DNA of 64,000 bases from Macrostomum lignano (taxonomy: Eukaryota), in the NCBI GenBank assembly GCA_002269645.1, contig NIVC01000245.1:434001-498000 (forward strand). Direction: 5' to 3'. The notes beneath the pieces are model-generated. The model ran no database searches and was not told the DNA's origin. It saw nothing but the letters and a program-made list of their open reading frames with translations. Below, one piece after another: positions 671 to 64,000 of this stretch; positions within the stretch are counted from its first letter, which is position 1; each line of letters starts with the position of its first letter. Both the position numbers and the translations under genes were made by a program.

Positions 671-689
671 TACATTTGTTCTATATTCG

Positions 690-885: not shown

Positions 886-909
886 TTTCTGGTAAGACTC
901 AAAACTCAC

Positions 910-11320: not shown

Positions 11321-11530
11321 GACCCGGATTCATTCGCTAGATTCTCTATTTGATGGTCGTAAAGTAAAAATGGCGTACGTTTCACACGACAAAAATAGGA
11401 TTTTAGTAAGTACGAGTATATAGGACGTTTAGTCCATGAAACGGTTCGCGCATAGCATTTGCTACAATTAGCTATTAACATGAAATTTCAACAGAGCAAG
11501 ATTCTATCAGGTTAGCTACACAAGCAAAGG

Positions 11531-14404
<2,874 letters not shown>

Positions 14405-17159: not shown

Positions 17160-18650
17160 CCAGTCAGGGAGATTTATAGAGAGATTGATGAAAGTCAGGG
17201 AGGGTAACAGTCTTGACTGAGTGACAGTCAGTGACGATGACATTCAGGAGTGACAGTCAGGGAGGGTGACATAGTGAGGGAGGGTGACAGAGTCAGGGAG
17301 GGTTACAGAAACAGGGAAAATGACAGAGTCAGGGAGGGTGACAGAGTCAGGGAGATTTATAGAGAGATTGATGAAAGTCAGGGAGGGTAACAGTCCTGAG
17401 TGACAGTCAGTGACGATGACATTCAGGAGTGACAGTCAGGGAGGGTGACAGAGTCAGGGAGGGTGACAGAGTCAGGGAGGGTGACAGAATCAGGGAAAAT
17501 GACAGAGTCAGGGAGGGTGACAGAGTCAGGGAGATTTATAGAGAGATTGATGAAAGTCAGGGAGGGTAACAGTCCTGACTGAGTGACAGTCAGTGACGAT
17601 GACATTCAGGAGTGACAGTCAGGGAGGGTGACAGAGTCAGGGAGGGTGACAGAGTCAGGGAGGGTGACAGAATCAGGGAGGGTGACAAAATCAGGAAAAA
17701 TGACAGAGTCAGGGAGGGTGACAGAGTCAAGGAGGGTGACAGAATCAGGGAGGGTGACAGAATCAGGGAGGGTGACAGAATCAGGGAAAATGACAGAGTC
17801 AGGGAGGGTGACAGAGTCAGGGAGGGGGACAGAATCAGGGAGGGTGACAGAATCAGGGAAAATGACAGAGTCAGGGAGGGTGACAGAGTCAAGGAGGGTG
17901 ACAGAGTCAAGGAGGGTGACAGAATCAGGGAAAATGACAGAGTCAGGGAGGGTGACAGAGTCAAGGAGGGTGACAGAATCAGGGAAAATGACAGAGTCAG
18001 GGAGGGTGACAGAGTCAGGGAGGGTGACAGAGTCAAGGAGGGTGACAGAATCAGGGAAAATGACAGAGACAGGGAGGGTGACAGAGTCAAGGAGGGTGAC
18101 AGAGTCAAGGAGGGTGACAGAATCAGGGAAAATGACAGAGTCAGGGAGGGTGACAGAGTCAGGGAGGGTGACAGAGTCAAGGAGGGTGACAGAATCAGGG
18201 AAAATGACAGAGACAGGGAGGGTGACAGAATCAGGGAAAATGACAGAGTCAGGGAGGGTGACAGAGTCAAGGAGGGTGACAGAGTCAGGAAGGGTGACAG
18301 AGTCAAGGAGGGTGACAGAATCAGGGAAAATGACAGAGACAGGGAGGGTGACAAAACAGGGAAAATAACAGAGTCAGGGAAGGTGACAGAGTCAGGGAGG
18401 GTGGCAGAGTCAGGGAGGGTGGCAGAGTCAGGGAGGGTGGCAGAGTCAGGGAGGGTGGCAGAGTCAGGGAGGGTGGCAGAGTCAGGGAGGGTGGCAGAGT
18501 CAGGGAGGGTGACAGAGTCAGGGAGGGTGGCAGAGTAGGGGAGGGTGACAGAGTAGGGGAGTGTGACTGATAGTCAGGGAGTGACAGTCAGTGAGGATGA
18601 CATTCAAGAGTGCCAGTCAGGGAGTGACAGCTAAGGACGGTGTGGCGGTC
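17160..18650. repeat. 18-bp minisatellite (GACAGAGTCAGGGAGGGT)n preceded by three ~185-bp higher-order units
   Basis: The block GGAGATTTATAGAGAGATTGATGAAAG recurs at ~17168, ~17350 and ~17530, followed by the 18-bp array. Confidence 0.9.
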
Positions 18651-22822: not shown

Positions 22823-22934
22823 AGACTGCCGACTGCCGGGTCTGGACGACTGGCGAGACAGGAATAGCGGGCGAGTGTTGCTTCAATGGGACTGAAGTGG
22901 ACCGTTTAGCTACTGGGTCTTCGGCTTCTTTATG

Positions 22935-24230
22935 ATGACTGCGACTGTGTCTGCCCTGTCTGCAACTGTGTCTGCCCTGTCTGCGACTGTGTCTGCCCTG
23001 TCTGCAACTGTGTCTGCCCTGTCTGCGACTGTGTCTGCCCTGTCTGCGACTGTGTCTGCCCTGTCTGCAACTGTGTCTGCCCTGTCTGCGACTGTGTCTG
23101 CCCTGTCTGCGACTGTGTCTGCCCTGTCTGTGTCTGCGTCTGCCCTGTCTGCGACTGTGTCTGCCCTGTCTGCGACTGTGTCTGCCCTGTCTGCGACTGT
23201 GTCTGCCCTGTCTGCAACTGTGTCTGCCCTGTCTGCGACTGTGTCTGCCCTGTCTGCGACTGTGTCTGCCCTGTCTGCGACTGTGTCTGCCCTGTCTGCG
23301 ACTGTGTCTGCCCTGTCTGCGACTGTGTCTGCCCTGTCTGCGACTGTGTCTGCCCTGTCTGCGACTGTGTCTGCCCTGTCTGCGACTGTGTCTGCCCTGT
23401 CTGCGACTGTGTCTGCCCTGTCTGCGACTGTGTCTGCCCTGTCTGCAACTGTGTCTGCCTGGTCTGCGACTGTGTCTGCCCTGTCTGCGACTGTGTCTGC
23501 CCTGTCTGCGACTGTGTCTGCCCTGTCTGCAACTGTGTCTGCCCTGTCTGCGACTGTGTCTGCCCTGTCTGCGACTGTGTCTGCCCTGTCTGCGACTGTG
23601 TCTGCCCTGTCTGCGACTGTGTCTGCCCTGTCTGCAACTGTGTCTGCCCTGTCTGCGACTGTGTCTGCCCTGTCTGCGACTGTGTCTGCCCTGTCTGCGA
23701 CTGTGTCTGTCCTGTCTGCAACTGTGTCTGCCCTGTCTGCGACTGTGTCTGTCCTGTCTGCAACTGTGTCTGCGTCTGCCCTGTCTGCGACTGTGTCTGC
23801 CCTGTCTGCGACTGTGTCTGCCCTGTCTGCAACTGTGTCTGCCCTGTCTGCAACTGTGTCTGCCCTGTCTGCGACTGTGTCTGCCCTGTCTGCGACTGTG
23901 TCTGCCCTGTCTGCGACTGTGTCTGCCCTGTCTGCGACTGTGTCTGTCCTGTCTGCAACTGTGTCTGCCCTGTCTGCAACTGTGTCTGCCTGGTCTGCGA
24001 CTGTGTCTGCCCTGTCTGCGACTGTGTCTGCCCTGTCTGCGACTGTGTCTGCCCTGTCTGCAACTGTGTCTGCCCTGTCTGCAACTGTGTCTGCCCTGTC
24101 TGCGACTGTGTCTGCCCTGTCTGCGACTGTGTCTGCCCTGTCTGCAACTGTGTCTGCCCTGTCTGCAACTGTGTCTGCCCTGTCTGCGACTGTGTCTGCC
24201 CTGCCTGCTTCAGTGGCTGCCCTGTCTGTC
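22935..24230. repeat. 21-bp minisatellite (ACTGTGTCTGCCCTGTCTGCG)n, ~60 copies
   Basis: Directly visible; explains the ATVSALS and QTGQTQS ORFs. Confidence 0.97.
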
Positions 24231-24490
24231 TCAGTCTTGACCTTACTACTTGACTAAGTAATAAAAATACAGAATGGAAAAAAATTAAGTCATTTAATAA
24301 AGTCTTGTATACATGAATGGAAGCCGCTTATAAGGCAAAATTTTGTTTATTGAAAATTCAATTTTCAAAGAGTATAAAAAGTTTCAAATATTAGGAAATC
24401 CATTTTTTGTACAGGCTAGAGCGTTGTACATTAAAAATTATTTATTTAAACGCTAAAAGCAAAAAAATTGAATTAAAGGAACCGGTAGCC

Positions 24491-43677: not shown

Positions 43678-46018
43678 TTACGATTTCATATCGCGAAGTT
43701 TAGACATTGCGTCGCGGAACAGATCTTTGTACTTGGGCCTGTAGTCTTGGTTCACTAGCCGTTTTCGTTCGGATCTTGTCTCTTCGGCAAATATCCCGCT
43801 GAGCCGCTGCTCGAAAGTCGCTCTACTCAACTCGCCTTCATCATTGCCCATTGCTAACAGAGCGTCATCGCTGAGAGTCTGCGACTGAGCTTGGGCCATG
43901 GACACTCGAGCCTGCTTGCCCGCCAGCAGCTGCTCGTACTCCACAACCAGCCGGTTGTACTGATCATTTAGCTCAGTGAGAAGAGAGATCTCAGCCAAGG
44001 CCGTTCCGGCCAGCTTCTTTGTAGCCCCAAGTCGGGACAAATTCTCTCTGGACGAGAACACGGTACCGCCCGACAGCAGCTGGCCGCAGTCAGCGTCTCC
44101 GCGAATCTGCTGCACGTCAGATTCGATTGGCGAGGCCAGGTCGTCGTTGCCGCCAACTACGAAACTGTTAAAGTTATCAACGCCGACCTGTAGAAATTCT
44201 TCGAACTCGTCCGCATCTTTTAATGGGCGATAGCTTGGAGGAGGCATTGGTCGATGGAGTCGCTGTTGATGTTGTTGATGCTGCTGGTGCTGCTCCAACA
44301 ACTGCTGCCGCAGCTGAGCGCACTCCTGGCGGGCCAGTTCAGCGTCCTGTTCAGCCGCTGCCAGCTCGGCAAGCAGTCGACGATTTCGAGCTTCGCTGTT
44401 AGCAACAGCTGCGGCTGCTAGGGCGGCATCGGGTTCGTCAACAGCCGGCGGCAGCTGCGGGTAGCTCGACGTCCGCGCTACCATCGACTTTGTCAGGCGG
44501 CCAAGTCGGGAAAGATCGCCGGACTTTTCCGATGCAGCACTGGCGGTGGCGGCTGTGGCGGCGGCTTCGGCTGCTGCTGCGGCTGCTGCTGCGGCATTGG
44601 CTGCAGCAGCGTCTCGCTGCTCCAGTTGCTGGTTGAGCTCCTCTACTCGAGCCTCTAAGTTTGAGCACTGCTTACCAAGGGCAGCGGCTCGCTCTCGAGC
44701 GGTCGCCCGCTCTGCCAGAAGTTCCCGGTTTCTAGCCTCGAGTTCGGCGTACTGTCTGTCAACTTCTTCAACCATTCGCACTTTGCCGTCGTTCAGGCCG
44801 CGAAGGGTTTGCACCTGGCGGGTCAGGAGCTCGATCTCCTGGGTCTGGTGCTCGCAGAGGCCTTTAAGTCCAGATAACTGAAGCTCCAGGTCGCGATTTC
44901 GTTCCAGCAGAGCCTTGCCTGCAAAGGAGGAGTGTCGTTTTTCATTTAATCAGAGATAAGCTACGGTTGGCGAGGTTGGAACAAGAGCAATAATAGCACT
45001 AGCTACTAGCTAAGTTAGGTTTGATTTTTACTTCTATAAGTTCTATGCTCTAGCTAGGGGTAAGCTTATTCTAAAAAGGTTGCATCCACTAATTTAAAGT
45101 TGACTAATTTTTACAAGAAATATGCGTAGATCTTAGTATTATCATCCTGTGCCTTTTTCGTTCATCTCCCAATATAACACTTCTTACTTGAGCCCTTCTC
45201 ATTCTCATCCTACCGTTCTCTCTTTCTGCTCTTCAGTTGCCTCTCTCAAATTTTTATGTACAGCATATGAACTAGTCACAGAGCCCTTTAGAGTCTAGAG
45301 TATCACAAATTTGTCGCGTTTTTTCATATCAAACTTCTACTAAATTCTTAACTTCATGGCTTCTCCTCCTCTGTAACGATTCGTGAGAGTGAGAGTCAGA
45401 CATCGAAATTGAGCTAGACAATTATGATGAGGTAGACCACCAAGAGGACTTTGACGGAATGCTGAATGCATGAAAGAGGGAAAAGTCCCAGTTCCCAGTT
45501 ACTGTACGAGCATGCATTAGCGCAAATTTAGCGCCACAGACGAGATTTTTAGCTTTTAAAGAAGTGTTACTGTTTAACCTAAAAATTAAAGTTATTCCGT
45601 CTAGAAGGGTCCCGTGATTCCCCCAATGACCCCCTTTGAATGTGTTTAAAAGCAATGCTGTGATGGTCAGCTCACCCAGCTCGGCGGCCAGTATCAGGTC
45701 ATTCTCATGCCAAGCGGTGCTGTCAACCAGCGAGCAGGCCTCGTCGACCGAGGTGTCACCAAAATCAGCTGGCATCGGCAGCGTTGCTTCATCGTTGGAG
45801 TATGCAGAATCACCTTCAGCTGACTGAGTCGCATTCAGTAGCAGGTTTTGCTGCTGATGATGGCGATGATGCTGCTGCTGCTGCTGCTGCTGCTGCTGAT
45901 TCCTTGTGGCAGTGTCCAAAGTCCACTGCAGTGTCATCTCGTGTCTAGGCGGACCCGGCGATTGAGGAGGTACCGAATGCGATTGAGCAGCCAAATTAGC
46001 AGCATTGGCGGCTGACAT
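43678..46018 (-). CDS. CDR2: CDR2/CDR2L (centrocortin)-like coiled-coil dynein adaptor; exons 45676..46018 and 43678..44918 (527 aa)
   Basis: CC1 box DLILAAELG|KALLERN, QEIELLTRQVQTLR, ISLLTELNDQYNRL and C-terminal PKYKDLF match CDR2-family blocks; the exon lengths sum to 1584 bp, in frame. Confidence 0.85.
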
Positions 46019-48111: not shown

Positions 48112-51100
48112 ATGATTCTGTTTACCATTGTCTTACTGCTGAATTCAATGTCAGTCACCTCTGGCCTGGACTTCAAGCTGGCAGTTGTGATTGAGCAGAA
48201 TGCAGTGAGCAGCTCCCTCATCGACCTGGCTGTGAGCAGACGGGTGAACTCGAACTGGAGACTGTTGCCAGGCCACTCAATGTCACATGCGATCGTGCAG
48301 GTGGCCGCGGATGGAGCCCAGCAGGCTGCTAAAGAAGGTGAGTAACTACGATTCATGCCGTTGAAACTACTTTGTATTTGCAGTCAAATTTATCCGAGAT
48401 TTGGGGTTCTCGGGCACAAGAACGGCGTCAATTTTGACTTCAAATTCTTTCTTATGAGGACCCAACCCAAGGCAAAGAATTTGTCCATGCCTAATTACCA
48501 ATGATCGGGAAAGTAAGGGACATTTTTCATCCTGCTTCAGCGGTGAATCTTCTTGCGCCTGCATGCTTAGGGTATCCGACGGAATCCGACGTTTCTAACG
48601 TGTCAGCCACTCGCCATTCCAGTGTGCTCTCAGTCCGGTCTGTCAGCTCTGCTAGCGATTGGCGGTTGCGGTCTCATCTCGGACCTGAGCTCGCTGGCCA
48701 AGTCCCTGAAACTGCCGTTTATCTTTCTGCCAACCGCTCTGTGTGAGGACGCATATTTTCGTGAGTTAAATACTGAGTTAGAAATCACTAAGTCTATCAG
48801 GGTGCTACATTAAACTAAATTACACTTGAATAAATCCCAAATTAGTGCGCAATTGCATGTAGGCAACATAAACGGAAATACTAGTGATTTTAAATGTCCC
48901 ATCATGAACTGCTGCTTTCCTTACTGAAAAATATTTATTCAGTAAGTATAAATAATTTATGAATTATTCAATGTGGTGGCATGTCGGTTTGTCGGCTCCC
49001 CCGCTCCGCTGTACGATTAAGATTATATTTGACAGATACTTTGTGGTGTTAGGACACTCAGGACGTGCTTCGGTAGATAATTGATAATACAGGCACGCTG
49101 GTGTACTGTATGGGTAGCGTAACATAGATTATATAAGACGATTGAGGCATATCAATACTAGTATACCGCCAAACCTGGTCTATGGGGAAAGCCAACCCCC
49201 CCCCTGACAAGCGGAAGAAAGGCAAAATAGATCGTAAACAGTGCAGAATGCACTACAAAAACAGTAAAAGAACTTTAAGTGCAATCAAAAGGTGAGGACC
49301 ACTGTATATGCGAGCGTAACAGGAAGTAAAATTTAAAGATCGTGTAAAGGGGATGTCAACTTAAGGGCTCTGGAATGGAGCCCGAAGTTCAGCTCCGGCC
49401 CAAACCGACTGCAATCGATAACTTGTCGGCCCAGACGACTAGAATCGCCGAGACATCCCATCCGGGTCCCTTCCCCTTTATCCCCTGGGACCCCAAGGAA
49501 GGGACCCGGATGGGATGTCTCGGCGATTCTAGTCGTCTGGGCCGACAAGTTATCGATTGCAGTCGGTTTGGGCCGGAGCTGAACTTCGGGCTCCATTCTG
49601 GTGCTTAAGTTGACATCCCCTTTCAGATCAACTTCCAGTAAAAAATACACCACGGAGATAAAAAACACTTTTCATCACAAAATTAATGATTGCATTTGAT
49701 CGAAGACATTGAAGACCACCAGTTTTATTTAGCAGATACAAAATGATCCTCTACTATATTTTACTATAGCTGAGTAGTAAAAGTTTTATGTTCATACTGT
49801 TCTCTTTGATACGATCTTTGGGTTTTACGTCCTGCTTTAAACTGTGGTCATTGCCAAAAGTACAAGTGTTTGACCCTCTAGAGTACGGAGCCATTGGCAG
49901 TCACTCGATGTCTGCGGTATTCGATGCGACAGCCAAAGTCATCTCGACCCTGGATGAAAAACAAGTGGCCATTTTGTACGACTCTTTCAACGGTAATCAC
50001 TAATATCATAATTATGTTCATGATAAAAGTGCGCTTGATCGAAAAATAATACTGTAATTCCACTCTACATTTCTTTACCCTCACAGAGAATGGCTTCATC
50101 CAGTTGTTGCAGACGCGACTCTCGAGCATCGGCATCAGCTCCGTCCCTTTCAACGCCGACCCCACACTCAGCGGAGATCTTCTCTCCGAGAGGCTCAGAC
50201 GCCTCATGAAGAAGCGCCTGTTCAACGCCATCGTCATGGCGACGCCTCGCAACGCGCAAAGCATCGTGGCAGCCGCTGCGAACGCCAGCGTCATGCAGCA
50301 GAACTACTTCTGGCTCGTGATTGACAGCGGCGGACTCAGCAAGTCCCACCTGATGCAGGTGTGTCCCAACAACTGCAACCTGGCTCTGCTCAGAGGAGGC
50401 ACAACTGGCGTCAATCGGTCATCGGACTGTCCGCCTGCAGTGAGAGACGTCTTTCCGAGCTGCGACACCGACAGCATTCGGGTGAGCGCCAGCTGCCGTG
50501 TCGTGCCCTGCCCTGCCCTGCCGTGCTCTGCCCTGCCCTGCCCTGCCCTGCCCTGCCCTGCCCTGCCCTGCCCTGCCCTGCCCTGCCCTGCCCTGCCCTG
50601 CCCTGCCCTGCCCTGCCCTGCCTGCCCTGCCCTGCCCTGCCCTGCCCTGCCCTGCCCTGCCCTGCCCTGCCCTGCCCTGCCCTGCCCTGCCCTGCCCTGC
50701 CCTGCCCTGCCCTGCCTGCCCTGCCCTGCCCTGCCCTGCCCTGCCCTGCCCTGCCCTGCCCTGCCCTGCCCTGCCCTGCCCTGCCCTGCCCTGCCCTGCC
50801 CTGCCCTGCCCTGCCCTGCCCTGCCCTGCCCTGCCCTGCCCTGCCCTGCCCTGCCCTGCCCTGCCCTGGCCTGCCCTGCTTTGCTCTGCTCGATTTGCTC
50901 TGCATCTCACATTAATACTCGATCTCCTTTCAACCGAAATCTCGCACAGACACTGGACATCCGTCTCGTGGATGCGATCGAGGCTCTGGCGAAGGCTCTC
51001 ACAGACTCGCTGACTCAGCCGGGATTCCGAGAGAGCAACGCGTCATGCTTTCCGCTGCAGCCGTGGTCGTCTGGCTCTCAAGTGCTCAGCAATGTCATGT

Positions 51101-54100
51101 CTGTGAGTTTTTGGTTGCTGCATTTGATTTTTTCATTGCAGCATTTTTGCTCACTTTGACGCTTATTTCATTGCTCATTATTAACGGGTCTACAGGTATT
51201 TGAGCAGTTGCACTCGCCACTCTGTCTCATTTCAGCTATCGAGCTTCGACTCGGGTCGCGGTGAGATTTCCTACAACTCGACAACAGGATTCTTCAACGC
51301 TCAGGGCGTTGAGATCGTTGCGTCATTCACTGAGCAGGTGGGAGCGGCAGCTCGGTTCGAGCTGAGCGGTCGGTTCAGCAGCGGCTCGTTGACGAAACTG
51401 TTCCACAAGAGCGGCGGTGCATTTGTGTTTCCCAACAGCTTCACAGGGTTCAACAATGCTAGCATTGTTATCTGCGCTCCATCGGTACGAAAAGCTAATA
51501 TCAATTTCTAACTATTTTTTTCAATTTAGTCTGGTTTACCTATTAAGGCACTGATTTACTTGACTTAGTTGCAGGAGGCTCTGTGCGTCCGGAAACAGTG
51601 AGGAGGCGTTGCCGCCCATTTCGCTAACCCCTGGCGACCACAGGCAGCTGGCGCCGGTGTCCGCAGCGTGGTCCCCCTCCAGAGAGTCCAGGAGGTGGAT
51701 TGTCGCTCCCTCGGTAGCCCTTAGGTAGTGGACGAGCTGGCAGAGATTCTCGGGCCTGAAAACGTCCGAGAGGTCCGGGTTTGGGCCGAGGTAGGTGAGC
51801 ACGTCCTGAGCAAAGGCGGGGAATTCACAGATAAAGTGCTCCGCATTCTCGACACCGGAGAGGCAGAAAGGGCATTCCTCACTGCGAATTTTTCCCTGGA
51901 GGTGACGATGCCTGGCAAAACAGCCCTGACATCACCTCCCTGGTGTCCCTGCTTTTGTCCAAGCAGGGCCCTGCGAAGGGCGGAGGAAGGACAGGGGACA
52001 TCCGCGCGTGATCGCCGGTAGTCAGGGGCGTTAGCTCACCTCTCCCTGTGCTTAGACGCCACCCACTGGTTGACCCGAGTGGTGACAACGGGTACGGGCC
52101 ACGGGCAGGGGACCAGTAAAAGAACCGGTCGAGCCAGCCTTGGCCAGGCGATCGGCCAGCTCGTTGCCGGGGTGGCCCGAGTGCCCAGAGATCCACCTTA
52201 GGGACACCTTGTTGCCCGATGCAGTCAAGGACTGTACGCGAGCATGTGGTGGTGCGCTTAAGGGCGTGAATCGCGGCTTGACTTTCCGAGTGGAGGGTAA
52301 TCTCCTTCCCCCAGACGCGCTGAGATTGTATGGCGCAGAAGCTGAGGCGAGAACTTTGTTCTGGAAGACGGTGGAGCAGGTGCCGGTGTGTTGGGAGAAG
52401 GTCGCCACAGTTCTACCTCCAGACACGATGCAGTAGCCGTAGCCTGAGGGGGAGTTGATTTGGGCCCGTTAGTGAAGCAGTAGATTTCATGGGGTTTCCA
52501 GTTGTCTCTTGCTTCATGACGTGGTGGAATGCTGTTTTTGAATTTGAGCGGAGGGCAGAGCGTGGACGGGATTCAATCCGAGAGGGTCAGCAGGCCTCTC
52601 GCTGCTTCCAGGTCTCGCAGGCTGAGGTCGCCATGCGGCCGGAGGTTTCGCTTTCTGATGGCGAACTGCTTCTGGATTGGGACACCCGCGTCAAGCAGAC
52701 GGTGGGTGGTTTTCATTGCCTCCCCTCTAACAAAGAGGTCAAGGAGGGAATGTCCAAGAAGGAATTCATGCCAGCGAAGGGCGTAGAGGGAGCCGCGCTC
52801 ATGACATCTCGAAAAGCGCGGCCTTGCACCCTTTCACCTCTAGGGCACTGTTTCAAATGAAGCCGGCGAAGGAGATGGCCGGTCTAACAATGGCAGTGTA
52901 AATCCACCAGAGGCGGCGGGGGTGGTGGCCCCAGGTAGCGCCGAAAGCTCTGCGGATCTGTGCGAGAGTCGTGAGAGCTTTGCGGGCTTTGGTTTGGACG
53001 TGCGGGGTCCAGCTCAACCTGTGGTCGAGGGTGACGGCCAGACATCTGGTTTGTTTCTCCATGGAAACGTGTTTGCCATAGAGGGAGAGCAGTTTGATCC
53101 TCCAGTTTCGGCGGCTGGTGAACATGATAGCCACGGTTTTAGACTCAGAACCTGAGACCGCAGCTGTGTGCCCAGCGCTTGGCACGGTGAATGAAGGCTT
53201 GAAGGAGGTCCCTGAGGACCGCGGGTGATGGTCCAGCCACAGTGGCGATAACATCGTCCGCGTAGCCGGCCTTCTGAACTGGGTCCGTATGCGGGCTGCA
53301 AAGCAGCTCGTCCATGACTAAATTTCAGAGAATCGGGCTGAGGACTCCACCTTGCAGTCCGTCTTTCTGGACTTCCCCGGAGCGGGAGTGTCCGAGGAGG
53401 TGCGAGGTGGCAGTACGATGGGTGACCATGTACATGATCTAGCGGGTAAGGTGCTCGTGCGTGCCCCTGGATTCCAGGGCCCGCTTAAAGGCTTCAAAAA
53501 GCACATTACTGAAAGCACCATCAATGTCGAGGAAAAGCGAGAGCGCGTATCCACTGCCAAGCACGGCGCGCTCCAGCTTGTCGACAATGGCGTGCAGCGC
53601 ACTTTCGATAGAGCGTCCAGGACGAAAGGCGTGCTGATTGGGGAGAGCGGGGAGTTCCTCAGCTCTACGAGGAGAAGGCGCCAGAGCACCAGCAGTTCCA
53701 TCAGTTTGAAGAAGAAAGATGTCAGACTAATGGGGCGGTAAGCTTTGGCAGAATGATGGTCTCCCTTCCCTGGTTTTGGTATAAAGACCACCGTGGCCTC
53801 TTGCCAGGCTTTTAGCACGTACCCGAGGGTAATGCTGGCCTTGAAGAGGTTGCAGAGGAGGCCGAGAAACCTGTCATTCTCAACTGCCTCATGAAGGAAG
53901 GCAGGATAAATGTAGTCAGATCCCGGTGACTTGAAGGGAGAGAAGGATTTTTCGGCGCAAGCCGTCCTCTCTCTAGTAATGATGGTCGAAGCCAGGATCT
54001 GTCCGCCCGGAGAGTGGTCCGGTGGGCCTAGCTGCGGTGCGGCACGTGGGAAAGAGCTGGTGAGCATGATGTCCAGCGATTCCCTGGGGTTCTCAGCGAG

Positions 54101-57100
54101 CCAGCCGTCCGGTCTTTTAATGACTGAGAGCTTTGAAATTATGTCGAGGGTGAGAGCCTTAACCACGCGTGAAGTAGGGCGGGTGCCTTCTAACTCCGCG
54201 CAGTATTGACGCCATTTGTCGGACTTGGCTTTCTGGTTTCACGCTTAAAGTTGTGAATTGCGTCTTGATAGGCGGCCAGGTCAGCTGGGTCCTTGCTCCT
54301 GCGAGCTTTCCGTTGGAGGCACTTTGGCTTGCGCCGGAGGGATCCAAGCGCCGGGTGCCACCAGGGGCGGTTTTTTACCTTTGTAGGCTTTAAGAGGACA
54401 GGAAGCCTCATGGGCTGTCAGGACGGTCTTGCTGAGCATGTCTGCAAGGTCATCCACTTCCTGACAGGTTGTTGGAGCGGCTGTAGTCAGCTGATCTGTC
54501 TGGCATATCAGGGTTTCCGCGAAAGCCGTCCAGTCAGTGTTCCGGACGTTCCTTCTCCACTTGAGGCAAGAGGATTGCAATCGAAAACGAACGAAGCGAT
54601 GGTCAGACAGAGACTCCTCTTCGTCCCACACCTCCCAGTCCTTGACCAGGGGCCAAACCATGGGAGACGAGGGTTACGTCGAGGGCCTCCGTCTATCGCC
54701 CGTTGACAAAAGGTGGGGGTTCCACAAATGTTGAAAAACTCAGTGTTGGTGGTGCAGATGTAAGCAAGGAGTTCCTCACCTCTGCTGTTGAAGGTATTAC
54801 TGCCCCAGTGGGTGTGGTGGGCGTTGACGTCGCCCGCCACCAGCAGCTCGAACCTGCGGTTAGAGCACTAGTCCACGAGGGAGGTGAGGTTGGGTGGAAC
54901 CGCGGGGCCATCGCCAGGGATATAAATCGAGGTGATGATGACCCTGCGGTTGGTGATTATGTGGTTGGACTGAATGACACAGAGGTCTCTATCAGAGAGG
55001 TCCGGTCTGTGACAAGCTTTGAGATGGGTAGACACGAACATGGCTGCTCTGGGGTTTTGGGGGTCCTGAAAACAGTCAATACCAGCAGGAATATTCGGAA
55101 TCTTACCTTTCTTCGTCCAGGGCTCCTGGAGTAGGATAATGCCCGGTTTCACGAAGTTTGCCACCTGCATCAGGTTGGTCGAGGCCGCGATGCAATGGTG
55201 TAGGTTTAGCTGCAGGATGTCCACTTCGGGGATTCCACGAGTGGTCCGCGCAGCTTCCTGCCGGCTCAAGGCCAGTTGTGCAGGAGAGCTGTCTCTTCTG
55301 CCTCGCCGATAGCTCCAGGCTCCAGTTCCATGGGCTCCTCCCGGATGGTCTCCATGGTCCAGGGCGGGGCCGCCAACTGGGCGGCATTCTCGCTTTCGGC
55401 CCGGTTTTCCGGCTGGGGTTTGCTTCGGTTGTTGGCCTTGGCGGTGTCCAGCAGCTGCTGAGTCAGACCAGAGCGGATAGTGTTCCGGGCGGGTTTCCGG
55501 CCCTTTCAACGTCCGCCTGTTGCTGCAGCTTTCGCAGCTTTCCCTCTGACAGGGTCCACGTCTTCGGAGGGGTCGTGACGAACGGGAGTTTCTTTTCCTG
55601 GGCGTTTCCGCCCGGCAGAGCCCCCGCTCACCCACTTACGCTTCTCCGGGGGCGGTGGACGGGTGGCGTCAGACTCAAAGCTAAAGAGCTGAATCTGCAT
55701 CAGCCCGACAGAGATGAGGGACATGTCCAGATAGCTGAGCATCCAGCTATCCAACAGTCCAAGAATAGACGTGAAACTAGTCACTAGCAGGCGACGCAGT
55801 TCGTCGACCTTGGTGATGGAGCTGCAAGCCGGAATCCAGGCACGGTGCCGGTGTGTCCAGGGTCGCTCGTCCTCCCTTTCGATAAACAGGTTTTCCAGCT
55901 CCGTACCCCAGTCGAAGGTTTTCAGCATCTCGAAGAGCTGCTGTCCAGACTGGCTGTCAGCGGGCTGGATATGGAGGGCTTGGTCCTCGACTTTCGTCTT
56001 TTGGACTGAAATAACGCTACTGCTCAAGGCCAGCTTGACCAGGTGGGAGTCCAACCTGCGCCAGATAAGGTTGAGCTGTTCGGCCGTAAGAGGCGTCTCC
56101 TGGCCTTGGATAATCAGGGCCGGCTGCCTCTTGGCCATAGCCGCATAGGTGCGCTTCGGCTTGGTGGTTTGGCCAGCACCCCCCGCTTTGGATCCCTCCA
56201 CGGCCGTTGGAGCTTCCACACGGGCAGAGGTCCCGTCACGGGAGGGGCCAGCCGCTCCAGGAGCTTCGGCGGCACCTGAAGCTTCTGACCGGCACGCGGG
56301 GTCCACCTTCTTGTCGGATGTTCGCTCCTCCGCGGGATTCGCAGAGTTACCGGCACCCTCTTTGGAGGTGGCCGGAGGGGCGGCTTTAGCACTCCTCCGT
56401 TCCTCCGCTTTGCGCTGGAGAAAGGCTTTGTAGCGAGCAATGCTACGGGCCTTCTTTTTAGAAGTCTGAGGTCCACTGTTCTGTTGTCCAGCCACTCCGG
56501 TATTTTCCTGAGCGGCGGCAGGGGCTGACTGAGAGGCACCGGGGGTTCCGGTGTTGCGAATGTCCGGGTGGGCCGCGGTACCAACCTCGGTTGGTGCTCC
56601 AGCAGTCTCGGACGTGTTGGGTGTAAGTGAATACTCCATGAGTCGCTGAAAGGCGAGTGGGGGCTAGAGGTGAGAAACCGCTGAGGCCGTAACCCCAAAC
56701 CCAACAGACAGGCCAAGAGATAGCGACCGGGATGTGGCTTAAGCCCTTACCGGCCCGACCGCTAGCAACCGAGAAACTCCCCGGCTAAGAGCCCGGCTTG
56801 GAAAAACCAGAGGCCGAACCAAAGGTCCATCAGCACGGTACTACACTGGGCCCTTGAGGGAATCAGGAGGACTGCCTCCGGAGCCTGCGGACTAGCCGTA
56901 TACCCAAAACGGCTGAGACAGAAGCCAAGGCCACGGATGGGTTGCCGCCGCCGGAGCCCAGTCAGTCCAGCAGCCCTAGAGCTGTCTTGAACACATGCGG
57001 GGCGTGAACCCCTGGGTCGGCTTGTGAGTCAGCTTGGAGAGGGTTCTTCTGCCATTCTTGCACCAGAATAGAGGGGTGCAGGTGTGTAGGATCGCAGACC

Positions 57101-60100
57101 TTAGCTCGTAAGCCTGGTCTTTCTCGTACTACACAGGCGTGCTGAACCCACCATTGCATGCTATTAAGGCACTGAGAGGTAACTAATTTTTTTTTCTGCA
57201 GTCTCCACCAGCAATGGTGTTTAAGCGGGTATCGACAAACGGCTTTGTGGTCGCTAGTGGATTGGCGATCGACCTGCTGGATTTCTTGGCTCGTAAATTG
57301 AATTTTCGGTAAGGTGTTGTCAGTAGCTCACATTGGATTTGGCCTTTTGTTCTTCAACCTAAATTTCTTACGTCTTTATATGGCTACAGGTATACAACAA
57401 AGAGTCCGGACGATGGTCAATGGGGAGGTCCCAGTTCAACATCATCCTACTATACCGGATGTGTTGGTGAAGTTCAGCGTGGTGTAAGTTTCCTGAGTGA
57501 CTGTGCATTGTGTTGTGCAATAGTACCCTTTTGCACTCTCGTGGACCACTCCAACCCTCCCAGTCGGCCCTTTCCCTCTATTTTTTCAATCAATAATCCA
57601 TGCGTACGCTGATAACACCACCTTGCATCTCACCCTCATACCGTACATTTGTTCCTAAGTTATTTAATATTCATGTAACGCGTAAGACAGATGAAAACAT
57701 ATACCGATAATGAAGTCGCTGTCTGGTGGGCAGCCCCGTCCTTTGCTCGCGTTTGGTCCGCCTCCGTTCGCTATTGAACAAATTACTCGTCTACCATAAA
57801 AATTGCACGGCGAACTGCATCGGCTACGGTGTAAGTTCGTGTTCCTGAGTTACTTTTCTTTTCCTGCTTCTCCTTGGGCGCGGGACGAGAGCCTTGACTG
57901 GGGACCTGGGGGGGGGAGTCGCAGCTTCCGACTGGTCAAAGCTGTAGGCGTCGCTTCGAAGGGGCGCACAACAATTGTTATACTTTCTTCTAGGATCGTG
58001 TTCCTTTTGCGACTTTATCCATCGCCTCTTTCTTTTATCATGCTCGATTAAGATTGCTCAGCTTGGCGCTGGCCCGTTCACAAAGACCACAGTTCGGGAC
58101 GCAGTGATCGACTACACAACGGACCTGTATGCGGAGTACAGCGGAGTGATAGTCCCTCGTGCAGAGGCTCGCACAGGCCTGTGGAATGTGTTCCTGCCGC
58201 TCCACTGGACTGTGTGGCTGGCTTTGGGTGGCTCCGTCTTCGTAGCGGCCTTTTTCGTATGGATTCTCGCCTACTTTTCACCATTCTCGAGCACAAATTT
58301 GAATCTTGACGGTGCAAATATCGACGAGGCCCGCTATGTGCAGTATGTTTGGACCATGATCGGTAGCTTCCTGCAGCAGGGCCAGGACTTTTACCCAAGC
58401 GCAATGTCACCAAGAACATTACTGGCCTTCTGGTGGTTTTTCAATGTTATCATCTACGCGGTGTACACAGGTATTTCATCGATTTTGAGGGAACAGTTTT
58501 TCTAGTGTTGGCTGTCGGTAAAATGAACCCTTAAGTGGTTGTATGCCATACGATGCAATTGAAAAGGATTGTTTGAACAAGGCTTGAATTGCGTTGGAAC
58601 TATGCTTTATTCAAGATTTTTGAGAGTGCAGAACTCAAACTCAGTTTCAGGGCTATATCCTCAGGATGTCTAAAATTTCCGAGTTAAACAAATCACTAAG
58701 TGGTTTCTATGCTAACTTCCTTATTGATGAGACTACTACGCGCTTTTAAATCATCTCGGAGTCATTCAGATATCCTGAGGACGTAGCTTGAAAGTGAGTA
58801 AACAATCCAGCCTTATGGAGTCATTTTAGCCAAGGGTAATAAGACTGGGGCACAATCACTGGAGATTTGAGGTTGTGTCCTTGTTGTCCTTGTCCTTGTT
58901 CTTGTCGCTGCGGATTCTAGAGGGTAAGGACCCAAGGGGGGGGCGGAGAAGGTGCGGCTCTAAATTTTTGGCAAAAATTCCCTTGGCCCCCTTATTTTTT
59001 TGGTCTCCGCCGTAGTGGGGGGGGGGCGACCGCCCCCCGACCCCCTACCCCACCTGGTTGCGCCACTGTGTGTCCAGGAGCTACTATTGTACTTTCAGCC
59101 TGAGCCCACGAGGTAATTTTTGACGTGGATTGTGTCTAGGAGTTACTTCTTGGTAGGAATTGTTCCACCCAGGATATTTAAGCGCCTAAGTAACACCCAA
59201 GGCATCAAGCGCCAATTTTTTATATGATACTATGACTACATGTGGAATTTCTAGTTGTAACTCATCGAAAATAATCTATGAAGAAAAAAACAAAGTCGAT
59301 GATGCGAAAGCCAATTTTTTGCAGCATTTCTTACTTCGACCCTGACCGTATCGGTGACCAGTGTGCGAATCAGGACTCTGCAGGATCTGGCTGATCAGAA
59401 CGAGATTCAACCAGCCGTGTCCTCCGGAAGCAATATGTACACTCTGCTGACAACTGCCCAGACTGGGGTGTATAAGCAGCTTGGTGAAAAATTACTGGCT
59501 GTTCGTAGCTGTGCTGTTGAGGTAATTCACGTTCGTGAAACTCATTTTGCTTTAATATAGTTGACTAACTATTCTATCCCGTGCAGCGATCCGGCGTTGG
59601 CGACGTCGGCTGAGATTTCCGACGTTTGTTAATGTCGCTACTAGATGGTTAATTTTATATTACACCGACGTTTAGCCGACACATTAACGTAGTGATTCGT
59701 CGGCGTAATTTAAAAGGATCCATTTATCGGCAACCTTTGTCGACTAAGGACCACTAGCAGTGTATACGTTTAATACGTTTAGGACGTTGGAATGTTGGAC
59801 GAGCTTAAAGGTATTAGCATAAGGTGCATACATTAATTTTACCTCGTAGGAGGTGTGCATGTACTCGTACATGTAATTCGTGGTAATTCGTATCTTAATA
59901 AGTTTTCCATTTAAATTCTTTGCTTGGAATTTGATAATAAACAAATCTAACCGCCTCCGAAAACTTCCCGCAGATGGAAACCAACTACAAGATCGCTTGC
60001 ATAGGTGACTTCTCGCTGATTGAATACATGGCCAAGATGAATTGCTCTCGTTGGTATGTCGCTTCGGAAGTTTTCAATGCTGCTACTGTGGCTTTCATCA

Positions 60101-60463
60101 TGCCGGAAGATGCTGTTTTTGGAAAGGCTATAAATTATTAGTGAGCGAAATTAATTCATTTTCTACTGCAACTCTGATTTTCGTATACGCTTTTGAAGCA
60201 TAACCTCTAAAATTACATGCCTAAAAATCTTCAGCATGCAGAAACTGCACGAGGCTGGCCAAATCCAACATCTGAAGCAGAAGTACTTTTCGCCAGAGAC
60301 CGACGTTACTTGCGCCAAAGGAACTAAAAGCAATACTGGCTCTGCTGATGCCATCGGCATAGAGACCATGGCAGGTATAGTTTTGGTCACGGCTTGCTTC
60401 TACGCTATTGGCCTTGTGCTGCTTGTTGGAGAACTGTGCGTTGCGCGACATAATAAAAAATAA
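48112..60463 (+). CDS. divergent ionotropic glutamate receptor-like subunit (ATD-S1-M1-P-M3-S2-M4); exons 48112..48337, 48623..48760, 49882..49992, 50087..50481, 50950..51102, 51236..51484, 57202..57308, 57390..57483, 58053..58470, 59325..59521, 59974..60140, 60235..60463
   Basis: Signal peptide, [38 protein letters not shown], pore [12 protein letters not shown]3 [24 protein letters not shown], and M4 [10 protein letters not shown]. All junctions are phase-compatible GT-AG. Confidence 0.9.
49346..49623. mobile_element. foldback/MITE-like near-perfect palindrome (arms 49346..49474 and 49497..49623)
   Basis: About 100 bp of perfect inverted repeat plus a further 20-bp outer match, around a 22-nt loop. 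The ORF track shows the same peptide on both strands. Confidence 0.85.
50505..50878. repeat. (CCCTG)n pentanucleotide microsatellite in iGluR intron 4
   Basis: Directly visible; lies between the GTGAGC donor at 50482 and the acceptor at 50949. Confidence 0.97.
51555..57160 (-). mobile_element. full-length non-LTR retrotransposon (ORF1; ORF2 with APE endonuclease, RT, RNase H and Cys/His knuckle), R1/Loa-like, frameshifted; 15-bp TSD CTATTAAGGCACTGA
   Basis: [13 protein letters not shown] and [12 protein letters not shown] (endonuclease), YRPISLTSF (RT), [28 protein letters not shown] (RNase H), CPFC...HFIC. TSDs at 51540..51554 and 57161..57175. Confidence 0.93.
55506..56639 (-). CDS. LINE ORF1 protein (377 aa as annotated)
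   Basis: Long ORF 5' of the endonuclease ORF with a low-complexity N-terminus and a globular core ending RAWIP; no CCHC knuckles are visible. Confidence 0.75.
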   Translation of the reverse strand: MEYSLTPNTSETAGAPTEVGTAAHPDIRNTGTPGASQSAPAAAQENTGVAGQQNSGPQTSKKKARSIARYKAFLQRKAEERRSAKAAPPATSKEGAGNSANPAEERTSDKKVDPACRSEASGAAEAPGAAGPSRDGTSARVEAPTAVEGSKAGGAGQTTKPKRTYAAMAKRQPALIIQGQETPLTAEQLNLIWRRLDSHLVKLALSSSVISVQKTKVEDQALHIQPADSQSGQQLFEMLKTFDWGTELENLFIEREDERPWTHRHRAWIPACSSITKVDELRRLLVTSFTSILGLLDSWMLSYLDMSLISVGLMQIQLFSFESDATRPPPPEKRKWVSGGSAGRKRPGKETPVRHDPSEDVDPVRGKAAKAAATGGR

Positions 60464-62906: not shown

Positions 62907-64000
62907 TCATTCCGAGTTGCTACTGCAGCACTGCGACCTGCGAATCTTCATGCAGAGCAGTTCTCCAAGCAGCAGAGCCAGTCCAAATCCGTAAAGCGCT
63001 CCGGTGACAGCGAAACAGCCCGCTACAACATCGAGACTGATCGCTGGTGCAGCGGAACTGCTCACTCCAGTGTTACAAGCGGTGATATTGTTCGACGCGT
63101 CGTACATGTTCGTCACTAGCTGCAGTTGACCGGACTCTCGGAACTTTCGAATGCTGTCGGGGTACATAATTACAGGCGTGGTTATATTATTTGCTACTTG
63201 TACTGGTCAAGTAAGGGGGCCGATTCCCAGTGGTCCACGCGGCGTTCTGGTGTGCCAGCGGCCAGGCTCGATTCCGAGTGCAGTCACATTAATTTGGGGC
63301 TGAATTGGAATCTCGACTTAGTTCCGCTTGTGAAATTAGGGCCAACCCCCAAGGCACAGTGAAGTGTACATGACTAACGATAAATAAAATCAGGGCCGCT
63401 GTGCACTCCCGTGTGAGTGTGTGCCTGCGCGTATGACTGCGTACGCATCCAGGCGCTTGTGTGCCTGCTCAGGGGAGTCGGCGGGTGGGCAGTGATTCCT
63501 CTCGCCGGTTGTGTACGAGGTAACAATGTCGCTTAAAATGCGCCAGGGTGCTAACAGCCCCCTGCCTCTGATTCGGCATCCTAGAACTGCTTACGAAGGA
63601 GGACTTGTAATAAAGGATACTTCAGTCTGCAATAAACAAACTGTAGCTTAGAGTATAGCACAAAATATTCCTCAATCAATATTAAAAATATGAGCTAATA
63701 TAAAATGAATATCGATTTGTCGACAGAACATCGTATTGATGCAAGAGCAGAGCAGTGCAGATAACTATAGTAAGTTTTTAGGGTCGAACCCAAGAAACTT
63801 GACAGAGTCGCACCCTTGTAAATTTCCAAAAAGGTAAATGAAACTTTCGACGTAGCAAGCACCTTCTGCAAGCTGTGCGAGTTTTCTACTGAGTAGTATA
63901 TACTACTGATACTCACTAGTAGTCCATCAGCTGGCCAAAGAAGGCATCCTCGGGGTACAAAAACGCCACAGTAGCCGCATTGAACACTTCGTCAGCGAAG
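62907..64000 (-). CDS. 3' end of a second iGluR-like paralog; exons 63917..>64000 and 62907..63153
   Basis: [25 protein letters not shown]|YIRKFRESGQ...AISLDVVAGCF...LLLGEL mirrors the + strand gene, with the same phase-2 intron. Confidence 0.88.
63215..63569 (+). mobile_element. near full-length SINE family A copy in the last intron of iGluR paralog 2
   Basis: Head GGGGGCCGATTCCCAGTGG ... GGCTCGATTCC; 3' end GCGCCAGGGTGC...CCCCCTGCCTCT. Confidence 0.88.

What the first reader, a model, noticed from the sequence alone, without database searches (positions are those of the whole stretch)
58053..60140. iGluR-like subunit with a rewritten gate ([11 protein letters not shown] for SYTANLAAFLT) and a non-glutamate-type binding set
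Splicing 58470 to 59325 gives [12 protein letters not shown], so the most conserved iGluR motif carries N5F, A7T, A8S and F9T; positions 7 and 8 (the lurcher site) control gating. The S1 Arg (TTVRD) and the PxT Thr are kept, but S2 GST becomes GSN and the Glu705-equivalent is Asp (CIGDFS), a pattern seen in glycine/D-serine receptors and chemosensory IRs. It keeps a full ATD, an AMPA/kainate-like pore (FLQQG) and only a ~8-aa tail. It is a candidate for a new lineage-specific sensory or constitutively active channel subfamily.
Basis: partly seen in the sequence, partly recalled or inferred. Interest (0 to 1): 0.72.

Follow-up and report, generated by a model that had tools for sequence, protein, structure and literature searches.

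The report
Flatworm glutamate-receptor-like channel, altered gate
This is an intact gene for a glutamate-receptor-type ion channel subunit from a Macrostomum-like flatworm; its unusual gate motif is real but typical of a flatworm-specific gene expansion, so it is a modest novelty.

Summary
The finding covers exons 9-11 of a 12-exon, 834-codon gene (48112-60463, + strand). It encodes a full-length ionotropic glutamate receptor (iGluR) subunit. The 58470|59325 junction is the only workable one and sits where a Macrostomum lignano paralogue has its intron. It gives [11 protein letters not shown] against SYTANLAAFLT.

The rewritten gate is not special to this gene. All nearest relatives are M. lignano paralogues (100% bootstrap clade), mostly YTGDLTAHLT, and Thr at position 7 is invariant in the ten scored. 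Only Phe5 and Thr9 are unique to the window.

Three multiple or profile alignments give Ser653, Asn654, Met655 and Asp705, with Arg485 kept. A published sequence rule calls that pattern glycine-type. Mollusc, annelid and nemertean relatives with a canonical gate share it, so it is a class trait.

The protein is outside the AMPA, kainate, delta and IR25a groups. It best fits a spiralian-only class, possibly the lophotrochozoan phi or zeta class.

"Lineage-specific subfamily" and "non-glutamate pocket" are supported. "Sensory" and "constitutively active" are untested, and the conserved binding pocket argues against an always-open channel. Interest is moderate to low.

The parts
48112..48337 (+). 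Exon 1: ATG, signal-peptide-like N-terminus and start of the ATD.
   Evidence: ORF and GT donor. The start of P0007 resembles it. The ANF_receptor match begins at residue 39. Boundaries of exons 1-3 have no clean homologue support.
48623..48760 (+). Exon 2 (ATD).
   Evidence: AG/GT sites and phase continuity. Lies inside a continuous ANF_receptor match.
49861..49992 (+). Exon 3 (ATD).
   Evidence: AG/GT sites and phase continuity. Lies inside a continuous ANF_receptor match.
50087..50481 (+). Exon 4 (ATD).
   Evidence: tblastn of P0001 and P0007; AG/GT sites.
50950..51102 (+). Exon 5 (ATD).
   Evidence: 49/51 residues identical to M. lignano P0004; tblastn.
51236..51484 (+). Exon 6 (end of the ATD and linker).
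   Evidence: 74/83 residues identical to P0004.
51485..57201 (-). Intron 6 (5.7 kb) holding an antisense, frameshifted non-LTR retrotransposon.
   Evidence: Pfam RVT_1 1.2e-15, Exo_endo_phos_2 1.4e-10 and RNase_H 6e-08 on minus-strand translations.
57202..57308 (+). Exon 7 (start of S1).
   Evidence: Lig_chan-Glu_bd match.
57390..57483 (+). Exon 8 (S1; DDGQWGG, with Trp at the GluA2 Tyr450 position).
58053..58470 (+). Exon 9: S1 end (Pro478, Thr480, Arg485 at 58095-58097), M1, pore loop (Gln586 at 58374-58376, Asp590 at 58386-58388) and M3 up to V-Y-T plus the first base of Ala.
   Evidence: The best-conserved exon against paralogues, 52-59% identity.
58471..59324 (+). Intron 9, phase 1, splitting the fourth codon of the SYTANLAAF motif.
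   Evidence: Same position and phase in the M. lignano P0001 gene. No alternative junction restores the canonical motif.
59325..59521 (+). Exon 10: rest of M3 ([12 protein letters not shown]) and S2 with Gly652-Ser653-Asn654-Met655 (59426-59437).
59974..60140 (+). Exon 11: S2 with Asp705 (60007-60009) and the first cysteine of the ligand-binding-domain disulphide (KMNC).
60235..60463 (+). Exon 12: end of S2 (second cysteine), M4, tail VARHNKK and TAA stop. An AATAAA overlaps the last codons.
62910..63999 (-). 3' end (S2b and M4 exons) of a second, divergent iGluR paralogue. It lies tail-to-tail and runs off the window end.
   Evidence: tblastn; translation [27 protein letters not shown] followed by an M4 exon.

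Best explanation
The locus is an intact 12-exon gene (48112-60463) for a full-length iGluR subunit with ATD, clamshell ligand-binding domain, M1, pore loop, M3 and M4. It comes from Macrostomum lignano or a close relative. It belongs to a Macrostomum-specific expansion nested in a flatworm clade. That clade groups with a spiralian-only AKDF-type class (the AMPA/kainate/delta/phi subfamily), possibly what others call lophotrochozoan phi or zeta. Inferred mechanism: the subunit assembles into tetramers, probably with paralogues. It binds a small alpha-amino acid through Arg485, Pro478/Thr480, Trp450 and Asp705, with Ser653/Asn654/Met655 in place of Gly/Ser/Thr. That pocket is glycine-type by the published rule, not glutamate-type. 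It opens a cation pore with Gln586 and Asp590, so calcium permeability and polyamine block are expected. In this clade the M3 gate has been remodelled. The residues expected to line the bundle crossing read Thr3, Thr7, Thr11, Thr15, which are mostly kept across the clade, and Thr7 is invariant. Positions 4, 5, 8 and 9, expected to pack against neighbouring helices, drift freely. The window copy carries Ala4, Phe5, Ser8 and Thr9. Shown: gene structure, junction, domain content, residue identities, clade membership. Inferred: ligand class, permeation, heteromeric assembly, and that the channel is still ligand-gated.
For: The 834-codon ORF runs across 12 GT-AG exons. Pfam finds Lig_chan 3.8e-27, Lig_chan-Glu_bd 4.7e-13 and ANF_receptor 1.1e-12. 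GluA2, GluK5 and GluD1 structures match at about 1e-31 to 1e-33. The intron position is shared with the M. lignano paralogue. The best database matches are all M. lignano, at 46-71% identity. In an NJ tree of 131 taxa and 380 columns, the window groups with six M. lignano proteins at 100% bootstrap, and the flatworm clade with Fasciola, Paragonimus and Spirometra has 78%. Class profile scores for the window core are: spiralian class 320 bits, deuterostome phi-like 220, kainate 180, IR25a-like 180, delta 169, AMPA 143. M3 motifs are listed. The pocket register is supported, and the rule for positions 653/655 is quoted in PMC6307864. The window keeps 30 of 35 pan-family conserved columns, as many as or more than most of its paralogues (25-32).
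Against: There is no transcript or cDNA evidence for this copy. No near-identical protein is in the databases. Exons 1-3 lack clean homologue support. The tail lacks the C-terminal PLDC-x-x-Y motif of several paralogues. The window keeps 57 of 68 clade-invariant columns (84%), near the low end of the clade's 83-98% range. The tree is neighbour-joining on a sample biased to relatives of P0001, without NMDA, epsilon or lambda references, and deep nodes are weak (42-63%). Ligand, permeation and gating are inferred from sequence rules only. Pore-facing assignments come from remembered GluA2 structures (Thr617, Ala621, Thr625, Met629), not from a model built here.
Confidence: 0.7

Rival explanations
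1. Constitutively open or leaky channel. The changes at positions 7 and 8 (Ala-Ala to Thr-Ser, around the Lurcher site) and loss of Asn5 destabilise the closed gate, so the subunit conducts without ligand.
For: Position 8 is the Lurcher site, where Ala to Thr gives constitutively open channels (quoted in PMC12226733). The window has Ser8 and Thr7. Phe5 and Thr9 occur in none of the 150 other relatives.
Against: Thr7 is invariant in the whole Macrostomum clade and occurs in 15 of 141 other relatives. Ser or Thr at position 8 occurs in 12 of those 141. These are therefore tolerated natural states. Arg485, Thr480, Asp705, the 653-655 motif and both ligand-binding-domain cysteines are kept, which is unexpected if gating no longer depended on ligand. 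A permanently open Ca-permeable pore (Gln586/Asp590) would be toxic, as in Lurcher neurons (general knowledge).
Confidence: 0.1
2. Young, decaying duplicate (unprocessed pseudogene, or a copy under relaxed constraint) in a duplicate-rich genome. On this view its unique gate letters and short tail are drift, not function.
For: Phe5 and Thr9 are unique. The tail lacks the paralogues' conserved end. A retrotransposon sits in intron 6. The mosaic relation to P0004 suggests recombination between copies. There is no matching annotated protein.
Against: There are no stops or frameshifts in 834 codons, and all 11 introns are GT-AG. The copy keeps 30 of 35 pan-family columns, which is within the paralogues' range of 25-32. 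Binding and pore residues are intact.
Confidence: 0.12
3. Peripheral chemosensory receptor, working like arthropod IRs: a tuning subunit of a lineage-specific, tandemly arranged family that detects environmental amino acids, not a synaptic receptor.
For: The expansion is lineage-specific, with 15 clusters at 50% identity (P0001-3, P0005, P0009-16, P0018, P0021, P0041), those looked up being M. lignano. A second paralogue lies 2.5 kb away, tail to tail. M3 is divergent and the pocket is non-glutamate. The cytoplasmic tail is very short.
Against: The protein is not in the IR25a group, scoring 180 bits there against 320 for the spiralian class. It keeps the ATD and the Arg/acid pair that, from general knowledge, most divergent IRs have lost. 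There are no expression data. This rival concerns the site of action and is compatible with the best explanation's mechanism.
Confidence: 0.3
4. Non-conducting, delta-like organiser subunit that signals through its extracellular domains and not through its pore.
For: NCBI's automatic names for the nearest non-flatworm relatives are 'delta-1-like'. The gate is divergent.
Against: A true delta receptor (P0098: 480 bits to GluD1 against about 290 to AMPA) sits in a different clade. The window scores only 169 bits against the delta profile. P0017 is equidistant from GluD1, GluK3 and GluA2. The pore residues Gln586 and Asp590 are conserved throughout the clade.
Confidence: 0.05

Closest known systems
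Uncharacterised Macrostomum lignano iGluR paralogues (e.g. PAA BOX15_Mlig017883g2 = P0001; UniProt A0A1I8H5G6, A0A1I8H6T5, A0A1I8IU14)
   Same: Same domain order, same intron in M3, Thr at gate position 7, pore QQGQDF, the G-[ST]-N-x pocket motif and Asp705. They form a 100% bootstrap clade with the window protein.
   Different: They are 42-49% identical over the ligand-binding and channel regions. The higher overall figure for P0004 (71%) comes from its near-identical ATD exons; it is 59% identical in exon 9. Most paralogues have Gly4-Asp5...His9 (YTGDLTAHLT), while the window has Ala4-Phe5...Ser8-Thr9. The window lacks their C-terminal PLDC-x-x-Y ending.
Spiralian 'delta-1-like' or 'kainate-3-like' iGluRs (Haliotis XP_067672970, Pecten XP_033737179, Lineus XP_064635760, Owenia CAH1794110), possibly the lophotrochozoan phi or mollusc zeta class of PMC8437780 and PMC12226733
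   Same: Full-length iGluRs with the same pocket signature (GPFT..R, G-[ST]-N-[LVM], Asp705). They give the highest class-profile score, 320 bits.
   Different: They keep a canonical or near-canonical gate (YTANLAAFLT) and vary at the Q/R site (Glu, Asn, His). They are 26-35% identical to the window protein.
Vertebrate AMPA (GluA2), kainate (GluK2/3/5) and delta (GluD1/2) receptors
   Same: Same fold and topology. Arg485, Pro478, Thr480, Gln586, Asp590 and the ligand-binding-domain disulphide are shared. PDB matches are at 1e-31 to 1e-33.
   Different: Identity over the aligned core is low (23% in the profile alignment). Only 4 of 9 gate-motif residues match. Ser653/Asn654/Met655/Asp705 replace Gly/Ser/Thr/Glu. 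The protein lies outside all three clades.
Glycine-binding iGluR subunits (GluN1/GluN3 and glycine-type epsilon/phi subunits as classified in PMC6307864)
   Same: Ser at 653, a non-polar residue at 655, an acidic residue at 705 and Arg485.
   Different: It is not related by descent to NMDA subunits. No NMDA sequence was among the 150 nearest relatives of its paralogue P0001 whose identity could be checked. Asn654 is invariant in its class and has no counterpart in the rule. The ligand is untested.
Arthropod ionotropic receptors (IR25a/IR8a and divergent IRs)
   Same: Both are protostome lineage-specific iGluR radiations. IR25a itself keeps an almost canonical motif (FTANLAAFLT).
   Different: The IR25a-like profile scores 180 bits against 320 for the spiralian class. 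Unlike divergent IRs (general knowledge), the window protein keeps its ATD and the amino-acid backbone-binding residues.

Membership tests
Ionotropic glutamate receptor superfamily | ATD + bipartite S1/S2 clamshell + M1, pore loop, M3 + M4 in one chain. | tested here: met
   Pfam ANF_receptor, Lig_chan-Glu_bd and Lig_chan all score above their cut-offs. The alignment to GluA2 runs end to end.
Ionotropic glutamate receptor superfamily | Conserved SYTANLAAF gating motif in M3. | tested here: not met
   Only 4 of 9 residues match (VYTAFLTST). That is exactly the minimum number of conserved residues required for inclusion in PMC6307864, which discarded sequences with fewer than four. The motif is typical of the family but not required: 35 of 151 relatives have 4 or fewer matches.
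AKDF subfamily (AMPA/kainate/delta/phi) | Phylogenetic placement with AKDF and not with NMDA, epsilon or lambda. | tested here: inconclusive
   The best-ranked structures for the window's C-terminal half are GluA2/GluA4, GluK5, GluD1 and GluK2. Named proteins among the 150 nearest representatives of the paralogue P0001 are AKDF-type or IR25a. No NMDA, epsilon or lambda references were in the tree.
AMPA, kainate or delta class | Nesting inside the class clade, with the best score against the class profile. | tested here: not met
   The NJ tree places it outside all three. Profile scores are 143, 180 and 169 bits against 320 for the spiralian class.
Phi class (GluF) / mollusc zeta | Monophyly with deuterostome GluF. 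PMC6307864 also notes that no Phi subunit has Gln586. | tested here: inconclusive
   The deuterostome phi-like group scores well below the spiralian class (220 bits against 320, below two other spiralian or unnamed groups) and is not sister in the NJ tree. The window has Gln586.
Chemosensory IRs (IR25a/IR8a co-receptors; divergent IRs) | Placement in the IR25a/IR8a clade, or loss of the ATD and of Arg/Thr/acid ligand-binding residues. | tested here: not met
   The IR25a-like profile scores 180 bits. The ATD is present. Arg485, Thr480 and Asp705 are present. Divergent IRs themselves were not in the comparison set.
Glycine-type binding pocket (sequence rule) | Arg485 + acidic 705 + Ser653 + non-polar 655. 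| tested here: met
   Arg, Asp, Ser and Met occupy these positions in the register given by two MAFFT alignments and hhalign. The rule is quoted. The actual ligand cannot be tested with these tools.
Lurcher-type constitutively open channel | Ala to Thr at motif position 8, with standing current. | not testable with these tools
   The window has Ser at position 8 and Thr at position 7. Testing this needs electrophysiology.

The most novel reading that the evidence does not exclude
The Macrostomum/flatworm clade is an undescribed iGluR class. Its gate has been rebuilt around an all-threonine pore face (Thr3/7/11/15) and is coupled to a glycine-type pocket. On this reading the window subunit, with unique Phe5/Ser8/Thr9, would have qualitatively different gating. 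It could be leaky, or act as a gating-modifier partner in heteromers. That would show that the most conserved iGluR motif can be replaced wholesale while ligand gating is kept.
Probability: 0.12. Interest if true: 0.6.

Novelty: new variant of a known kind. Interest (0 to 1): 0.35.

Why it matters
SYTANLAAF is the most conserved stretch of animal glutamate receptors and the site of disease-causing gain-of-function mutations. A natural family that keeps an intact amino-acid pocket and Q/D pore while rewriting positions 4, 5, 7, 8 and 9 is a ready-made mutational series. It could show which gate residues are truly required. Flatworms were absent from the main iGluR phylogeny read here (PMC6307864), whose inclusion filter on this motif would have dropped several of these paralogues. 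Receptor diversity in this phylum is therefore probably under-counted. For this single gene the gain is modest: it is one more uncharacterised member of a family already present, unnamed, in public protein sets.

Tried and rejected
- Alternative splice sites: every AG in the intron and every GT/AG pair near the junction was enumerated. None restores ANLAAF.
- Hidden alternative M3 exon: tblastn of eight relatives found nothing in intron 9.
- The locus of the closest partial relative, P0004, is not on record. Its M3 could not be read, and no dN/dS could be computed.
- Synteny with the P0001 locus: only exon-level similarity and a 90%-identical repeat fragment were found, so the loci are not orthologous.
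- Literature: no paper on flatworm iGluR classes or on this motif variant was found. The scallop paper has no supplementary text held.
- The pairwise GSN = GST register was rejected in favour of the ungapped register.
- Pfam on the raw minus-strand ORFs of the intron insert found nothing. Frame-stitched segments did match.
- Structure prediction was not run.
Full report
**What is there**

The window is eukaryotic DNA with spliced genes, microsatellites and retroelements. The finding's interval, 58053-60140, holds three exons of a larger + strand gene. I assembled 12 exons:

- 48112-48337
- 48623-48760
- 49861-49992
- 50087-50481
- 50950-51102
- 51236-51484
- 57202-57308
- 57390-57483
- 58053-58470
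- 59325-59521
- 59974-60140
- 60235-60463

All introns are GT-AG, the phases are consistent, and the product is 834 residues with no internal stop. The C-terminal 403 residues match Pfam Lig_chan (3.8e-27) and Lig_chan-Glu_bd (4.7e-13). The N-terminal 431 residues match ANF_receptor (1.1e-12). GluA2, GluK5 and GluD1 structures match at 1e-31 to 1e-33. Exon boundaries from exon 4 onward are corroborated by tblastn of relatives. Exons 1-3 rest on splice signals and the continuous ANF_receptor match only.

**The junction and the gate motif**

Exon 9 ends GTG TAC ACA G|gtatttc. Exon 10 begins ttgcag|CA TTT CTT ACT TCG ACC CTG ACC. Together they read [13 protein letters not shown] enumerated every AG acceptor for this donor. 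Only 59325 and 59415 keep the frame open, and 59415 deletes the rest of M3. No donor/acceptor pair nearby gives ANLAAF.

I fetched the gene of the M. lignano paralogue P0001 (contig NIVC01000845). Its intron sits at the same codon and phase: TAC ACG G|gtgagg...ttgcag|GC GAC CTG ACG GCC CAT. The motif differs from SYTANLAAF at positions 1, 5, 7, 8 and 9, which leaves 4 of 9 identities.

**Who its relatives are**

A word-indexed search with the C-terminal half returned eight proteins. Seven are from Macrostomum lignano, the best at 46% identity, and the eighth is a weak spider hit.

An exhaustive HMMER search with P0001 gave 150 representatives. I looked up 30 of them by name. I then built a neighbour-joining tree of 131 sequences over 380 columns with 100 bootstraps. 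The nesting was:

- The window protein with six M. lignano proteins: 100%.
- Adding two further M. lignano proteins (YTADMIGYLT): 63%.
- Adding Fasciola, Paragonimus and Spirometra proteins, which makes a flatworm clade: 78%.
- Outside that lie an unnamed set of metagenome or transcriptome proteins, then mollusc, annelid and nemertean proteins that NCBI auto-names 'delta-1-like' or 'kainate-3-like'.
- One 63-member grouping had 95% support. It holds the flatworm, unnamed, named spiralian and ATD-less 'YSGNLIAFLT' sequences. It excludes delta, deuterostome phi-like, IR25a-like, placozoan, AMPA and kainate sequences. Every member whose source was looked up is spiralian; the unnamed members' taxa are unknown.

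P0098 served as a true delta anchor (480 bits to GluD1). The spiralian relative P0017 is equidistant from GluD1, GluK3 and GluA2.

Class profiles built without any flatworm sequence scored the window core as follows:

| Class profile | Score (bits) |
|---|---|
| Spiralian class | 320 |
| Unnamed set | 260 |
| ATD-less spiralian group | 238 |
| Deuterostome phi-like | 220 |
| Placozoan | 217 |
| Kainate | 180 |
| IR25a-like | 180 |
| Delta | 169 |
| AMPA | 143 |

Published work reports a lophotrochozoan phi clade and a mollusc-specific 'zeta' class (PMC8437780; PMC12226733). I could not obtain those sequences, so whether the spiralian class equals either is open. The main metazoan study had no flatworms and discarded sequences with fewer than four conserved SYTANLAAF residues (PMC6307864).

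**The gate is a family trait**

M3 motifs in the Macrostomum clade are YTGDLTAHLT (most members), FNGDLTAHLT, FTGDLTAHLT, YSGVLTSFLT, FAGNLTAYLT, YTGDLTAKLA and near-canonical YTANLTAFLT. Across ten clade members, variation by position is:

| Motif position | Residues seen |
|---|---|
| 7 | Thr in all ten |
| 6 and 10 | Leu (one Met at 6) |
| 3 | Thr, in 7 of 10 |
| 11 | Thr, in 7 of 10 |
| 15 | Thr, in 7 of 10 |
| 4 | Gly or Ala |
| 5 | Asp, Asn, Phe or Val |
| 8 | Ala or Ser |
| 9 | His, Phe, Tyr, Lys or Thr |

From memory of the GluA2 structures (a lead, not a test made here), positions 3, 7, 11 and 15 (Thr617, Ala621, Thr625, Met629) line the bundle crossing, and position 8 is the Lurcher site. 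On that reading the clade has fixed a threonine-rich pore face and lets the packing face drift.

Among all 151 relatives with an M3, 35 have four or fewer identities to SYTANLAAF. Thr7 occurs in 15 of the 141 relatives outside the clade, and Ser or Thr at position 8 in 12 of them. Only Phe5 and Thr9 are unique to the window.

**The binding pocket and a register correction**

Arg485, Pro478, Thr480 and Asp705 are confirmed, as is Trp at the Tyr450 position.

Pairwise phmmer does the same, but it needs a one-residue gap upstream and a five-residue gap downstream. Two MAFFT alignments and an hhalign profile-profile alignment are ungapped from the DLxxQxEI anchor to LL/FF (Phe658-Phe659). They place window G-S-N-M on Ser652-Gly653-Ser654-Thr655, with high per-column confidence. 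The pocket is thus Ser653, Asn654, Met655, Asp705.

The rule used in the field is Gly653/Thr655 for glutamate, and Ser653 plus a non-polar 655 for glycine (quoted). By that rule the pocket is glycine-type.

The same G-[ST]-N-[LVM] and Asp705 occur in Haliotis, Pecten, Lineus, Owenia, Nucella and Saccostrea relatives that have canonical gates. The pocket is therefore ancestral to the class and independent of the gate change. Its conservation, with both ligand-binding-domain cysteines, argues that ligand binding still matters.

**Is the gene alive?**

- There are no stops or frameshifts, and all splice sites are canonical.
- The protein keeps 30 of 35 columns that are at least 85% conserved across the other 124 sequences in the alignment, which excludes only the six M. 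lignano clade-mates. Its paralogues keep 25-32.
- It keeps 57 of 68 columns invariant in its six clade-mates (84%), near the low end of the clade's 83-98% range. Its basal branch may account for that.
- Against function: no transcript evidence, no near-identical database protein, and a tail (VARHNKK) lacking the PLDC-x-x-Y ending of several paralogues.

I put a pseudogene or relaxed copy at about 0.12.

**Mechanism and rivals**

The most likely reading is a subunit of a ligand-gated cation channel. I infer that it is gated by a small amino acid, has a Gln586/Asp590 pore, and probably forms heteromers with paralogues (confidence 0.7 for identity and class, lower for ligand and permeation).

- Constitutive leak (0.1) draws on the Lurcher analogy. 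It is weakened by the natural recurrence of Thr7 and Ser8 and by the conserved pocket.
- A sensory role (0.3) is compatible with the mechanism but has no evidence beyond the expansion and clustering.
- A delta-like non-conducting role (0.05) is not supported by the tree or profiles.

**Verdict**

It overstates the uniqueness of the gate, mis-registers one motif, and offers functions that remain untested. The gene is a new variant within a known superfamily, and the family is already present, unnamed, in public protein sets. Interest is 0.35.

Noticed in passing
window 62910-63999 (minus strand): The 3' end of a second, divergent iGluR paralogue lies tail-to-tail about 2.5 kb from the first gene. 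Its S2b exon reads [27 protein letters not shown] and has the same TA|gtgag donor. It also has an M4 exon with a different tail. Its M3 lies beyond the window end.
   Followed up: partly
window 51485-57201 (element on minus strand, roughly 52000-56700): Intron 6 is 5.7 kb because it holds an antisense non-LTR retrotransposon with endonuclease, reverse transcriptase and RNase H domains. The element is broken by stops and frameshifts. A 70-100 bp piece is 90% identical to a repeat in the M. lignano contig L001 at 13637-13873.
   Followed up: yes
window exons 5-9 compared with protein P0004 (M. lignano A0A1I8...): The relationship is mosaic. Identity is 96% and 89% in ATD exons 5-6, then 35%, 71% and 59% in exons 7-9. 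The break falls exactly at the retrotransposon-bearing intron 6. That suggests recombination or gene conversion between paralogues, or a chimeric database model. The P0004 locus could not be fetched.
   Followed up: partly
window 50493-50879: A (CTGCC)n microsatellite of about 78 copies at 96% match sits in intron 4. It stays open in all three forward frames and mimics coding sequence.
   Followed up: yes
window 60451-60463: The stop codon is embedded in CATAATAAAAAATAA, so an AATAAA signal overlaps the last codons. The tail lacks the PLDC-[VFI]-[VFI]-Y ending shared by paralogues P0001, P0002 and P0003. No remnant of that motif is visible downstream.
   Followed up: partly
window 5769-7292 (+) and 8345-9949 (-): Two convergent, apparently intronless paralogous ORFs of 507 and 534 residues. 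The first has a weak NHL-repeat match; Pfam found nothing for the second.
   Followed up: partly
window 56-954, 10580-11353, 17590-18538, 22930-24257: Long tandem-repeat arrays that stay open in several frames on both strands (for example TGQTQSQ / ATVSALS units). They coincide with strong GC and AT skew in the composition profile.
   Followed up: no
window 18829-20031 (-) and 43678-44814 (-): Two further long ORFs. One is low-complexity, rich in Gly, Ala, Pro and Gln, with a weak LIM-interaction-domain hit. The other looks like a coiled coil. Neither was identified.
   Followed up: no
relatives P0052 (Fasciola), P0152 (Paragonimus), P0058 (Spirometra): Parasitic flatworm members of the same clade have even more divergent gates (WEADITAYLT, WQADMTAFMT, YQAELVAFLS), and Fasciola P0052 and Spirometra P0058 also have an altered pore loop. 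P0152 is annotated in NCBI as 'putative ATP synthase F0 A subunit', which looks like a mis-annotation.
   Followed up: no
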